Assembly: GCF_044704955.1 (NCBI RefSeq)
Contig: NC_091995.1
Span: forward strand, 53,258,001 to 53,322,000
Direction of reading: 5' to 3'
From: Pristiophorus japonicus
Taxonomy: Eukaryota
DNA: 64,000 nucleotides
The position numbers and the translations under genes are program-made. Shown here piece by piece: positions 10,337-64,000 of this stretch (positions are counted from its first letter, which is position 1; every line of letters begins with the position of its first letter). The notes beneath the pieces were generated by a model that saw only the letters and a list, made by a program, of their open reading frames with translations, was not told where the DNA came from and did no database searches.

Positions 10337-10362
10337 GTAGGTCAGGCACTGACCGTCCTGTC

Positions 10363-13300
10363 ACAGGGCACAGGGCACAGGGCACAGGGGACAGGGGACA
10401 GGAGACAGGAGACAGAGGACAGGAGACAGGGGACAGGAGACAGGGGACAGGAGACAGGAGACAGGGGACAGGAGACAGGAGACAGGAGACAGGAGACGGG
10501 ACAGGAGACAGGGGACAGGAGACAGGGGACAGGGGACAGGAGACAGGGGACAGGGGACAGGAGACAGGAGACAGGAGACAGGAGACAGGGGACAGGGGAC
10601 AGGAGACAGGGGACAGGAGACAGGGGACAGGAGACAGGAGACAGGGGACAGGAGACAGGGGAGAGGAGACAGGAGACAGGGGACAGGGAAGAGGAGACAG
10701 GAGACAGGAGACAGGGGACAGGAGACAGGGGACAGGGGAGAGGAAACAGGAGACAGGGGACAGGGGACAGGGGAGAGGAGACAGGGGAGAGGAGACAGGA
10801 GACAGGGGACAGGGGACAGGGGACAGGAGACAGGAGACAGGAGAAAGGCGACAGGGGAGAGGAGACAGGGGACAGGGGAGAGGAGAGAGGAGACAGGGGA
10901 CAGGGGACAGTAGACAGGAGACAGGGGACAGGGGAGAGGAGACAGGGGACAGGAGACAGGGGACAGGGGACAGGAGACAGGAGACAGGGGACAGGGGACA
11001 GGAGACAGGGGAGAGGAGACAGGGGACAGGGGAGAGGAGACAGGAGACAGGAGACAGGAGACAGGGGACAGGAGACAGGGGACAGGAGACAGGAGACAGG
11101 AGACAGGGGACAGGAGACAGGAGACAGGAGACAGACAGGGGACAGGGGACAGGGGACAGGGGACAGGGGACAGGAGACAGACAGGGGACAGGAGACAGCG
11201 GACAGGAGACAGGAGACAGACGGGGGACTGGGGACAGGGGAGAGGAGACAGGAGACAGGAGACAGGAGACAGACAGGGGACAGGAGACAGACAGGGGACA
11301 GGGGACAGGGGACAGGAGACAGGGGACAGGGGACAGCAGACAGGGGACAGGAGACAGGGGATAGGGGACAGGAGACAGACAGGGGACAGGGGAGAGGAGA
11401 CAGGAGACAGGAGACAGACAGAGGACAGGGGACAGGAGACAGGAGACAGACATGGGACAGGGGACAGGGGACAGGAGACAGGAGACAGGGGACAGGGGAC
11501 AGACAGGGGATAGGAGACAGGAGACAGGAGACAGGGGACAGGGGAGAGGAGACAGGAGAGCGGAGACATGCGAGCGGAGACATGCGAGCGGAGACATGAG
11601 AGAGGAGACAGGAGACAGGAGACAGGAGACAGGAGACAGGAGACAGGAGACAGGAGACAGGAGACAGGGGAGAGGAGACAGGAGACAGGGGACAGGAGAC
11701 AGGGGATCGGGGACAGGAGACAGACAGGGGACAGGGGACAGGGGAGAGGAGACAGGAGACAGGAGACAGACAGGGGACAGGAGACAGAGGACAGGGGACA
11801 GGGGACAGGGGACAGGAGACAGGAGACAGGAGACAGACAGGGGACAGGGGACAGGACACAGGAGACAGGGGACAGGAGACAGACAGGGGACAGGGGACAG
11901 GGGACAGGGGATAGGAGACAGGGGACAGGAGACAGGAGACAGGAAACAGGGGACAGGTGAGAGGAGACAGGAGACAGGATACAGGAGACAGGAGACAGGA
12001 GACAGGAGACAGGAGACAGGAGACAGGGAACAGGGGGCAGGGGACAGGGGAGAGGAGACAGGAGACAGGAGACAGGAGACAGGAGACAGGGGAGAGGAAA
12101 CAGGAGACAGGGGACAGGAGACAGGGGACAGGAGACAGGGGACAGGAGACAGGGGACAGGAGACAGGGGACAGGAGACAGGGGACAGGAGACAGACAGGG
12201 GACAGGGGACAGGGGACAGGAGACAGACAGGAGACAGGGGACAGGGGACAGGAGACAGCGGACAGGAGACAGGAGACAGACGGGGGACTGGGGACAGGGG
12301 AGAGGAGACAGGAGACAGGAGACAGACAGGGGACAGGAGACAGACAGGGGACAGGGGACAGGGGACAGGAGACAGGGGACAGGGGACAGGAGACAGGGGA
12401 CAGGAGACAGGGGATAGGGGACAGGAGACAGACAGGGGACAGGGGACAGGGGAGAGGAGACAGGAGACAGGAGACAGACAGGGGACAGGAGACAGGAGAC
12501 AGACATGGGACAGGGGACAGGAGACAGGAGACAGGAGACAGGAGACAGGGGACAGGAGACAGGAGACAGGGGACAGGGGACAGGGGACAGGAGACAGGGG
12601 ACAGGGGAGAGGAGACAGGAGACAGGAGACAGGAGAGCGGAGACATGCGAGCGGAGACATGAGAGAGGAGACATGAGACATGAGACATGAGACAGGAGAC
12701 AGGAGACAGGAGACAGGAGACAGGAGACAGGAGCCAGGAGACAGGGGAGAGGAGACAGGAGACAGGGGACAGGAGACAGGGGATCGGGGACAGGAGACAG
12801 ACAGGGGACAGGGGACAGGGGAGAGGAGACAGGAGACAGGAGACAGGAGACAGACAGGGGACAGGGGACAGGAGACAGAGGACAGGGGACAGGAGACAGG
12901 AGACAGGGGACAGGGGACAGGGGACAGGAGACAGGAGACAGACATGGGACAGGGGACAGGAGACAGGAGACAGGGGACAGGGGACAGGGGACAGGAGACA
13001 GACAGGGGACAGGGGACAGGGGATAGGAGACAGGAGACAGGAGACAGGAGACAGACAGGGGACAGGGGACAGGGGAGAGGAGACAGGAGACAGGAGACAG
13101 GGGACAGGGGACAGGAGACAGGAGACAGGAAACAGGGGACAGGTGAGAGGAGACAGGAGACAGGGGACAGGATACAGGATACAGGAGACAGGAGACAGGA
13201 GACAGGAGACAGGGGAGAAGAGACAGGAGACAGGGAACAGGGGGCAGGGGACAGGGGACAGGGGAGAGGAGACAGGAGACAGGAGACAGGAGACAGGAGA

Positions 13301-61900: not shown

Positions 61901-64000
61901 AGGAGACAGGAGACAGGGGACAGGAGACAGGAGACAGGAGACAGGGGACAGGAGGCAGACAGGGGACAGGAGACAGGGGACAGGGGACAGGGGACAGGAG
62001 ACAGACAGAGGACAGGAGACAGGGGACAGGGGACAGGAGACAGACCGGGGACAGGAGACAGGGGACAGGAGACAGGAGACAGACAGGGGACAGGAGACAG
62101 GAGACAGACAGGGGACAGGAGACAGGGGACAGGAGACAGACAGGGGACAGGAGACAGGGGACAGGGGACAGGAGACAGGAGACAGGAGGCAGGGGACAGG
62201 GGACAGGAGACAGGGGACAGGGGACAGGAGACAGGGGACAGGAGACAGGAGACAGGGGACAGGAGACAGGGGACAGGGGACAGGAGACAGGAGACAGGAG
62301 ACAGGAGACAGGGGACAGGAGACAGGAGACAGGAGACAGGGGACAGGGGACAGGAGACAGGGGAGAGGGGAGAGGAGACAGGGGACAGGAGACAGGAGAC
62401 AGGAGACAGGGGACAGGACTCAGGGGACAGGGGACAGGAGACAGGGGACAGGGGACAGGAGACAGGGGACAGGAGACAGACAGGGGACAGGAGACAGGAG
62501 ACAGGGGACAGGGGACAGGAGACAGGGGAGAGGAGACAGGAGACAGGAGACAGTGGACAGGAGACAGGAGACAGGGGACAGGAGACAGGAGACAGGAGAC
62601 AGACAGGGGACAGGGGACAGGGGACAGGAGACAGACAGGTGACTGGGGATAGGGGACAGGAGACAGACGGGACAGGGGACAGGACACAGGAGACAGCAGA
62701 CAGGGGACAGGAGACAGGGGACAGGAGACACGGGACAGGGGACAGGGGAGAGGAGACAGGAGACAGGGGACAGGGGACAGGAGACAAGGGACAGGGGACA
62801 GGAGACAGGGGACAGGAGACAGGGGACAGGAGACAGGAGACGGACAGGAGACAGGGGACAGGGGACAGGGGATAGGAGACAGGGGACAGATGACAGGAGA
62901 CAGGAGACGGGACAGGGGACAGGGGATAGGGGACAGGAGACGGGACAGGGGACAGGAGACAGGGGACAGGGGACAGGAGACAGGGGACAGGGGACAGGGG
63001 ACAGGAGACAGGAGACAGGGGACAGGAGACAGGAGACAGGAGACAGGAGACTGACAGGGGACAGGGGACAGGGGATAGGGGCAGGAGACAGACAGGGGAC
63101 AGGAGACAGGGGACAGGGGAGAGGGGAGAGGGGAGAGGGGAGAGGAGACAGGAGACAGGAGACAGGAGACAGGAGACAGGAGACAGGAGACAGGAGACAG
63201 GAGACAGGAGACGGACAGGGGACAGGAGACAGGAGACAGTAGACAGTAGACAGGAGACAGGAGACAGGAGACAGGAGACGGACAGGAGACGGGAGACAGG
63301 GGACAGGGGATAGGAGACAGGGTACAGAGGACAGGAGACAGGGGACAGGAGACAGGAGACAGGGGACAGGAGACAGGGGACAGGGGACAGGAGACAGGAG
63401 ATAGGGGATAGGGGACAGGAGACAGGAGACAGGAGACAGGAGACAGGAGACAGGAGACAGGAGACAGGAGACAGGAGACAGGAGACAGGAGACAGGAGAC
63501 AGGAGACGGACAGGAGACAGGAGACAGACAGGGGACAGGGGACAGGAGACAGGGGACAGGGGACAGGAGACAGGGGACAGGAGACAGGGGACAGGGGACA
63601 GGAGACAGGAGACAGGGGACAGGAGACAGGAGACAGGGGACAGGGGACAGGAGACAGGGGACAGGAGACAGGGGACAGGAGACAGGAGACAGGAGACAGG
63701 AGACAGGAGACAGGAGACAGGGGACAGGAGACAGGAGACAGGAGACAGGGGACAGGAGGCAGACAGGGGACAGGAGACAGGGGACAGGGGACAGGGGACA
63801 GGAGACAGACAGAGGACAGGAGACAGGGGACAGGGGACAGGAGACAGACCGGGGACAGGAGACAGGGGACAGGAGACAGGAGACAGACAGGGGACAGGAG
63901 ACAGGAGACAGACAGGGGACAGGAGACAGGGGACAGGAGACAGACAGGGGACAGGGGACAGGGGACAGGAGACAGGAGACAGGAGGCAGGGGACAGGGGA
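13999..64000 (+). repeat. 7-bp satellite (ACAGGAG/ACAGGGG)n, main block of at least 50 kb with higher-order structure, running off the window
   Basis: Continuous 7-mer tandem repeat that is almost T-free on the + strand. Rare variant units recur at kilobase-scale spacings. Confidence 0.99.

What the first reader, a model, noticed from the sequence alone, without database searches (positions are those of the whole stretch)
10337..64000. MHC class I intron 3 of at least 53.6 kb made almost wholly of a 7-bp satellite
Seen: the satellite starts 26 nt after the alpha2 donor, and no alpha3 (Ig C1) exon appears before the window ends. Established knowledge: this intron is normally sub-kb to a few kb in well-studied class I genes. 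Inference: either Pol II transcribes and splices out more than 53 kb of simple repeat (satellite intron gigantism, which could limit expression timing or level and act as a length-variable regulatory allele), or the expansion has cut the peptide-binding exons off from the rest of the gene. The undamaged exons favour the first reading.
Basis: partly seen in the sequence, partly recalled or inferred. Interest (0 to 1): 0.8.

Follow-up and report, generated by a model that had tools for sequence, protein, structure and literature searches.

The report
Shark MHC gene with giant satellite intron
A Japanese sawshark MHC class I gene has intact peptide-binding exons followed by at least 53.6 kb of a 7-base repeat, and the public protein model says the rest of the gene lies beyond it, so this is probably a huge satellite-filled intron, though nothing here shows that it is transcribed and spliced.

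Summary
The alpha2 exon (10061-10336) ends at a good GT donor. After 26 unique bases, an (ACAGGRG)n array runs to the window end. It fills 98.9% of the 53,664 intron bases visible and is broken only by a 558-bp LINE tail. No alpha3 exon lies in the window.

A public Pristiophorus japonicus protein (UniRef100_UPI00398F8E1F, 367 aa) is 100% identical to both window exons. It continues with alpha3, a transmembrane segment and a tail of the same shark class I lineage, none of which is in the window. An unchecked scan note on the next window (s1-877593) reports class I-like 3' exons after at least 54 kb more satellite. If these belong to the same gene, the intron is about 108 kb.

The sense strand is 0.7% T. 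It has no poly(A) hexamer, no pyrimidine run longer than 3 and only two donor-like sites, so as an intron it is nearly free of processing signals. It is also G-rich and prone to R-loops and G-quadruplexes.

No evidence supports a regulatory role. Other unchecked notes report satellite-filled introns in other class I genes on this chromosome.

The parts
6923..7074 (.). Run of 152 N inside a CT-rich microsatellite, 145-296 bases upstream of the alpha1 exon. Left as it is.
   Evidence: The 17-residue leader of P0001 is not found anywhere in the readable window.
7219..7482 (+). MHC class I alpha1 exon (264 bp, phase 1; acceptor AG at 7217-8, donor GT at 7483-4).
   Evidence: Pfam MHC_I at E = 8.5e-15; class I chains in the PDB; 100% identical to P0001 residues 18-106.
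7483..10060 (+). Intron 2 (2,578 bp). A 46-bp minisatellite lies at both ends (7483-7702 and 9527-10006), and its units repeat the exon's own donor motif (TGGTGAGC, 10 copies). A LINE 3' fragment lies between them (about 8993-9525).
   Evidence: TRF, motif count, blastn.
10061..10336 (+). MHC class I alpha2 exon (276 bp, phase 1; acceptor AG at 10059-60).
   Evidence: Pfam MHC_I at E = 1.1e-19; best PDB match is nurse shark 7cpo at E = 2.4e-22; 100% identical to P0001 residues 106-197.
10337..10362 (+). Intron 3 donor (GTAGGT) and 26 unique bases before the repeat.
   Evidence: Read directly.
10363..13439 (+). Proximal, more degenerate part of the (ACAGGRG)n array. It starts with ACAGGGC units and holds the only two strong donor-like sites (ACAG|GTGAGA at 11954 and 13140).
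13440..13997 (+). 5'-truncated LINE 3' end inserted in the array. It keeps a 134-codon open frame and is 72-75% identical to copies at 8993-9525 and 4007-4562.
   Evidence: No Pfam match for this tail.
13998..64000 (+). Distal (ACAGGRG)n array, 50 kb, running off the window end. Sense strand: G 49%, A 36%, C 14%, T 0.7%. Higher-order repeats of 0.9-8 kb.

Best explanation
The window holds the 5' part of a shark MHC class I heavy-chain gene. The gene belongs to a lineage conserved across sharks and rays. Its intron 3 has been taken over by an expanded heptanucleotide repeat, (ACAGGRG)n on the sense strand.

Shown: both exons are intact with canonical phase-1 splice sites, and the array starts 26 bases after the donor and fills at least 53.6 kb. 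A public protein model for this species joins exactly these two exons to alpha3, TM and tail exons that are not in the window.

Inferred: the array grew from a local ACAGGGC seed by slippage and unequal exchange, as its higher-order repeats suggest. It is old enough to have taken a LINE insertion and to have 4-10% divergence between higher-order copies. It is tolerated because it carries almost no RNA-processing signals in the sense direction: T is 0.7%, with no AATAAA/ATTAAA, no pyrimidine tract longer than 3 and two donor-like GT sites in 53 kb. The true donor at 10337 therefore has nothing to pair with, and no signal for cleavage and polyadenylation is met, before the distant alpha3 acceptor.

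The likely costs are a long transcription time, tens of minutes at the usual 1-4 kb per minute, and slowed elongation on a G-rich non-template strand that favours R-loops and G-quadruplexes. I read the array as tolerated genomic baggage in a repeat-rich elasmobranch genome, not as a regulatory device.
For: - Exons and splice sites.
- Array extent and purity.
- P0001 (UniRef100_UPI00398F8E1F, P. japonicus, 367 aa) is 100% identical to both exons and has C1-set alpha3, TM and tail.
- Its alpha3 ranks the relatives in the same order as alpha1 and alpha2 do (P0002 > P0005 > the rest), and its C-terminal SVQEPLV motif is shared with relatives. The two halves therefore belong to one lineage.
- P0001 keeps every column that is invariant in the 8-sequence family alignment.
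- Sense-strand counts of GT, donor-like sites, poly(A) hexamers, pyrimidine runs and G4 blocks.
- Higher-order repeats with 90-96% identity and a LINE insertion.
- An unchecked note on the adjoining window reports class I-like 3' exons behind at least 54 kb more satellite. Other notes report satellite-filled introns in other class I genes on this chromosome.
- Elasmobranch genomes hold many regions dominated by simple tandem repeats.
- Transcription through long simple repeats in introns has precedent: Drosophila kl-3/kl-5 and CNBP CCTG up to 11,000 units.
Against: - No RNA evidence of any kind.
- The protein model may rest on homology chaining, not on spliced reads.
- The leader exon is not in the 7.2 kb of readable upstream sequence.
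- Alpha1 carries a Cys (IPCQPW) where all six relatives aligned at that position have Arg.
- A strongly G-skewed non-template strand of 50-100 kb (GC skew 0.55) is the kind of template that stalls Pol II.
- Array length was not checked against long reads.
Confidence: 0.6

Rival explanations
1. Split, dead gene. The array, probably heterochromatic, has uncoupled exons 2-3 from the 3' exons. The exons look intact only because the loss is recent or because paralogues correct them by gene conversion. The public protein is a computational chain across the array.
For: No transcript evidence. No leader exon found in the window. An odd unpaired Cys in alpha1. Earlier notes report many class I fragments and retrocopies in this genome. 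The template is G-rich and R-loop-prone.
Against: The 540 coding bases have no stop or frameshift. Splice sites are canonical. P0001 keeps every family-invariant column. The array is not young, given its LINE insertion and 4-10% divergence between higher-order copies, yet the exons are clean. The model's 3' half is of the same lineage.
Confidence: 0.25
2. Assembly artefact. The array is a misjoin between the 5' half of one class I gene and unrelated satellite, or its length is badly wrong.
For: Long simple repeats are the hardest sequence to assemble. I could lay no reads. DNA runs of the same organism hold only 0.67-0.73 of the sampled words of 7100-10400. That stretch also contains a minisatellite.
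Against: There is no N within the array. It has structured, diverged higher-order repeats, and 22% of its 50-mers are unique. That is enough for accurate long reads to anchor on. The boundary shows a gradual ACAGGGC-to-ACAGGGG-to-ACAGGAG transition, not an abrupt join. The protein model and the neighbour-window note fit a continuous gene.
Confidence: 0.1
3. Functional array. The repeat is kept by selection. It could act as an intron-delay timer or expression damper with length-variable alleles. It could act as a G-run and GGAGA-rich intronic splicing enhancer. It could also act as a recombination-prone spacer between the peptide-binding and Ig-like modules.
For: The array starts right after the donor. 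It holds 3,991 GGAGA and 6,427 GGG sites. The sense orientation happens to be the one free of processing signals. Similar architecture is noted in other class I genes of this genome (unchecked).
Against: Nothing tested here speaks for selection. The signal-free state follows from base composition alone, and the antisense strand is likewise nearly free of acceptor AG (30 in 50 kb). There are no AGCT sites, so it is not like an immunoglobulin switch region. Tandem-repeat-dominated regions are common in elasmobranch genomes.
Confidence: 0.05

Closest known systems
Satellite DNA-containing gigantic introns of Drosophila Y-linked fertility genes (kl-3, kl-5, ks-1; PMC6508621, PMC11207136)
   Same: A protein-coding gene whose intron is filled with a simple satellite of 5-7 bp units. 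In Drosophila the satellite is transcribed as part of the pre-mRNA and removed.
   Different: The fly introns are megabase-sized, Y-linked, expressed only in spermatocytes and need dedicated RNA-binding proteins (Blanks, Heph). This one is at least 53.6 kb (perhaps about 108 kb), lies in a vertebrate immune gene and is G/A-rich. Its transcription is unproven.
Human intronic repeat expansions, e.g. CNBP intron 1 (CCTG)n, 75 to 11,000 units (PMC10849350)
   Same: Tens of kb of a short repeat inside an intron of a gene that is still transcribed. The size range is comparable: 11,000 units of 4 bases is 44 kb.
   Different: Those are unstable, pathogenic alleles of a short normal repeat. This array has higher-order structure, diverged copies and a LINE insertion, so it is an established part of this assembled haplotype. 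Nothing here shows whether other haplotypes carry it.
Elasmobranch MHC class I lineages (classical UAA; nonclassical UBA, UDA, UEA, UFA; PMC10751288)
   Same: The alpha1 and alpha2 exons match MHC_I and are closest to shark class I. Relatives at 63-85% identity in alpha2 occur in sharks and a sawfish, so the lineage is old. Most peptide-terminus residues are kept (Y7, Y59, T143, K146, W147, Y159, Y171, by my reading of the and 10 alignments).
   Different: I could not assign the lineage because the reference papers were not held. Positions 84 (K) and 123 (L) differ from the classical pattern by my reading. That fits a nonclassical gene, as note s1-877731 suggested, but I did not test it.
Immunoglobulin switch regions
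   Same: Kilobases of G-rich repeats on the non-template strand inside an intron upstream of Ig-domain exons. They are prone to R-loops.
   Different: AGCT is absent (0 in 53 kb) and there are only 20 WGCW sites. The array is 5-10 times longer, and no link to recombination is known.

Membership tests
MHC class I heavy-chain gene | Alpha1 and alpha2 domains matching the MHC_I profile | tested here: met
   PF00129 at E = 8.5e-15 (alpha1) and 1.1e-19 (alpha2), both above the curated cut-off. Hundreds of class I chains matched in the PDB.
MHC class I heavy-chain gene | One domain per exon, phase-1 junctions, alpha2 disulphide pair, N-glycosylation sequon at the end of alpha1 | tested here: met
   Exons of 264 and 276 bp with AG/GT borders in phase 1. 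Cys in SGC and in ICIEW, and an NET sequon.
MHC class I heavy-chain gene | Ig C1-set alpha3 exon, transmembrane and cytoplasmic exons downstream in the same gene | not testable with these tools
   They are present in protein model P0001 (PF07654) but not in the window. Note s1-877593 is an unchecked lead.
Satellite-containing gigantic intron (Drosophila Y-loop type) | The bulk of the intron is tandem simple satellite | tested here: met
   98.9% of the 53,664 intron bases in the window.
Satellite-containing gigantic intron (Drosophila Y-loop type) | The satellite is transcribed in the sense direction within the pre-mRNA and spliced out | not testable with these tools
No RNA run is on record. 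No junction-spanning fragment was found.
Satellite-containing gigantic intron (Drosophila Y-loop type) | Megabase scale | tested here: inconclusive
   At least 53.6 kb is seen. If the neighbour-window note holds, the total is about 108 kb. Either value is far below a megabase, but the far end was not seen.
Immunoglobulin switch-like region | Dense AGCT/WGCW AID target motifs | tested here: not met
   0 AGCT and 20 WGCW in 53,059 bases.

The most novel reading that the evidence does not exclude
An intact, expressed vertebrate antigen-presentation gene is routinely transcribed through about 100 kb of pure heptanucleotide satellite and spliced across it. This architecture recurs in several class I genes of the sawshark MHC chromosome. 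That would make it a vertebrate, somatic counterpart of the Drosophila Y-loop genes. It would imply either special handling of G-rich repeat transcripts or selection for repeats that carry no processing signals.
Probability: 0.3. Interest if true: 0.7.

Novelty: new variant of a known kind. Interest (0 to 1): 0.5.

Why it matters
MHC class I genes are usually compact and quickly inducible. Satellite-filled giant introns are well documented mainly for Drosophila Y-linked genes. If this gene is expressed, a vertebrate cell can transcribe and splice across 50-100 kb of a G-rich simple repeat, the same kind of sequence that is pathogenic at comparable length in human repeat-expansion disease. It would also offer a natural system for asking which repeats are tolerated in introns. 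Here the tolerated repeat is one whose sense strand lacks donors, pyrimidine tracts and poly(A) signals. If the gene is not expressed, this is one more class I gene remnant in a repeat-rich genome.

Tried and rejected
**Steps that gave nothing**
Only local scripts on the window file touched them.
I could not get the gene's coordinates, the downstream exons or the orthologous introns.
- A word search with an unchanged 111-residue piece of the database protein P0001 spanning the alpha2/alpha3 junction found nothing. This says nothing either way.
- The leader exon was searched by motif and by short-query tblastn and is absent from the readable window. The N run was left alone.
- The search of earlier findings by sequence, by words and near the window end gave blanks.
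- The shark lineage papers PMC7002201 and PMC8454915 are not held, so I made no UDA/UBA assignment.
- I searched the two exons separately and left out any search with a joined model of my own.

**Readings rejected**
- A hidden exon inside the array: the only non-repeat patches are 25-36 bases plus the LINE.
- The huge minus-strand ORFs, up to 5,487 codons, as genes: they follow mechanically from a strand with 0.7% A.
- A switch-region analogy: AGCT is absent.
- Recursive splicing: there are few AG|GT sites and no pyrimidine tracts.
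Full report
**What is in the sequence**

The window carries two exons of an MHC class I heavy-chain gene on the + strand.
- Alpha1 is 7219-7482: 264 bp, acceptor AG at 7217-8, donor GT at 7483-4.
- Alpha2 is 10061-10336: 276 bp, acceptor AG at 10059-60, donor GT at 10337-8 in the context AAAG|GTAGGT.
- Both exons are in phase 1, as class I domain exons are.
- Both pass Pfam's MHC_I cut-off, at E = 8.5e-15 and 1.1e-19.
- Both match hundreds of solved class I chains. 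The best match for alpha2 is the nurse shark molecule 7cpo.

After the alpha2 donor come exactly 26 unique bases. ACAGGGC units then start at 10363 and grade into ACAGGGG and ACAGGAG.

**The array**

Tandem Repeats Finder reports a single array, 10384-63997, with period 7, 7,888 copies, 81% matches and consensus ACAGGAG.
- Exact ACAGGAG/ACAGGGG 7-mers cover 94-97% of each 2-kb bin from 14 kb onward.
- The one real interruption is 13440-13997, a 5'-truncated LINE 3' end in the + orientation. It is 72-75% identical to two copies further upstream.
- Satellite makes up 98.9% of the 53,664 intron bases in the window.
- No alpha3, TM or cytoplasmic exon is present anywhere in the window.

**The array is not a featureless or collapsed repeat**

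About 5,100 of the 6,491 parsed units are the two main variants. There are 416 extra ACAG half-units and many minor variants. Self-comparison shows several higher-order repeat periods:
- about 0.93, 1.2 and 2.15 kb in the 14-20 kb stretch
- about 8.1 kb in the 20-32 kb stretch
- about 4.65 kb in the 38-58 kb stretch, with copies 92-96% identical
- about 2.4 kb in the 58-64 kb stretch

In addition, 22% of 50-mers are unique. The proximal 3 kb is more degenerate than the rest. Together with the LINE insertion, this points to an array with some history. It also gives accurate long reads enough markers to assemble it. I could not check the array's length against reads.

**Is it an intron?**

I searched the exons one at a time and left out any search with a joined model of my own.

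The word search used the window's own open frame from 10063, scored on the 91 alpha2 residues. It returned a 367-residue protein of Pristiophorus japonicus, P0001 (UniRef100_UPI00398F8E1F, 'major histocompatibility complex class I-related gene protein-like'), at 100% identity.
- P0001 residues 18-106 and 106-197 are identical to the two window exons.
- The rest of P0001 is a 17-residue leader, a C1-set alpha3, a transmembrane segment and a tail. None of these is in the window.
- The species has a RefSeq assembly, GCF_044704955.1, and the protein's name is in RefSeq style.

So an annotation pipeline has placed the remaining exons elsewhere. Given the layout here, that would be beyond the window end.

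The two halves of the model fit together.
- In an alignment with seven relatives from sharks and a sawfish, alpha3 ranks the relatives in the same order as alpha1 and alpha2 do.
- The C-terminal SVQEPLV motif is shared with relatives.
- P0001 keeps all 72 columns that are invariant in the family.

**A lead from the adjoining window**

Its title reads 'No alpha1/alpha2 exons within 56.5 kb upstream: a >=54-kb satellite may lie inside an MHC class I-like intron'. If that note describes the other end of the same intron, the 3' exons lie near my coordinate 118,500 and the intron is about 108 kb. It is an unchecked AI note on sequence I could not read, so I treat it as a lead, not as evidence.

**What could not be tested**
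I have no coordinates for the model and no orthologous introns.
- The run search found DNA runs of the same organism and three small runs of unknown kind, but none on record as RNA.
Only local scripts read them.
- A word search with an unchanged 111-residue piece of P0001 across the alpha2/alpha3 junction found no fragment.

There is therefore no evidence here, for or against, that the gene is transcribed and spliced.

**How it probably works**

On the sense strand the array is 49% G, 36% A, 14% C and 0.7% T. Several things follow directly from this composition across 53 kb:
- no AATAAA or ATTAAA
- no pyrimidine run longer than 3
- 104 GT dinucleotides
- only two sites that look like donors, ACAG|GTGAGA at 11954 and 13140

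The array has about 11,900 AG dinucleotides, but none has a pyrimidine tract in front of it. A polymerase entering from alpha2 would thus meet no signal for cleavage. The spliceosome would find no competing acceptor until the real one. That is the most economical reason why such an insert can be borne. It is an inference from composition, and the antisense strand is nearly free of acceptor AG as well.

The costs are also predictable.
- GC skew is 0.55 along the whole array.
- There are 60 blocks of four or more GGGG runs.
- The template should therefore form R-loops and G-quadruplexes when transcribed in the sense direction.
- At the usual 1-4 kb per minute, 54-108 kb adds tens of minutes or more to each transcript.

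I found nothing to suggest a regulatory purpose. AGCT is absent, so the array is not like a switch region.

**Context**
- Elasmobranch genomes are reported to hold many 100-kb regions dominated by simple tandem repeats.
- Other notes of this scan report satellite-filled introns in other class I genes on the same chromosome. These are s1-878895 (intron 1, about 56 kb), s1-877445 (more than 25 kb before the cytoplasmic exon) and s1-877881. All are unchecked.
- The closest described systems are the satellite-containing gigantic introns of Drosophila kl-3 and kl-5.
- Human intronic expansions such as CNBP (CCTG)n, with up to 11,000 units, are the other close comparison.

This case differs from both. 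It lies in a vertebrate immune gene, is of intermediate size, is G/A-rich, and has the structure of a long-established array.

**Verdict**

The reading as a giant intron of a whole gene is the best supported, at about 0.6. A split dead gene stands at about 0.25, an assembly error at about 0.1 and a selected function at about 0.05. The decisive data are the downstream scaffold, the annotation's evidence line, and spliced or nascent RNA.

Noticed in passing
window 7483-7702 and 9527-10006: Intron 2 begins and ends with the same 46-bp minisatellite. Its unit repeats the alpha1 exon's donor motif (TGGTGAGC, 10 copies; GGTGAG, 13 copies). LINE fragments lie between the two blocks, so one minisatellite seems to have been split by insertions. 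Each unit is a potential cryptic donor. This matches note s1-877742.
   Followed up: partly
window 6517-7155: A CT-rich (CCCTCTCTC-like) microsatellite of about 640 bases lies directly upstream of the alpha1 exon and encloses a run of 152 N (6923-7074). The leader exon of the protein model is not in the readable 7.2 kb upstream. Intron 1 is therefore either longer than 7.2 kb or the leader lies under the N run, which I left alone.
   Followed up: partly
window 7340-7348 (alpha1 codon for Cys in IPCQPW): The sawshark protein has Cys where all six relatives aligned at that position have Arg (IPRQPW, IARQPW, ISRQPW or IARMPW). That leaves an unpaired cysteine in alpha1.
   Followed up: no
window 1-6300 and 7700-9530: The flanks and intron 2 are packed with non-LTR retrotransposon pieces on both strands. 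These include one weak reverse-transcriptase match at 1694-2194 (29.5 bits, just under Pfam's 29.6 cut-off) and three copies of the same LINE 3' tail at about 4007-4562, 8993-9525 and 13440-13997.
   Followed up: partly
window 10114-11364 (+) and 13567-30030 (-): Very long open frames run through the array on both strands, up to 5,487 codons on the minus strand. Reading through the alpha2 donor gives a 416-codon frame ending in (GDRRQET)n. These follow from the scarcity of T and A, and I do not take them for genes.
   Followed up: yes
P0002 (Logan contig of 1,195 bases, organism not given): A 294-residue protein runs from leader to alpha3 and is 85% identical in alpha2 and 79% identical overall to the sawshark protein. 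It comes from a short contig in which the domains are contiguous, so it is a transcript or a retrocopy of a close relative or paralogue.
   Followed up: no
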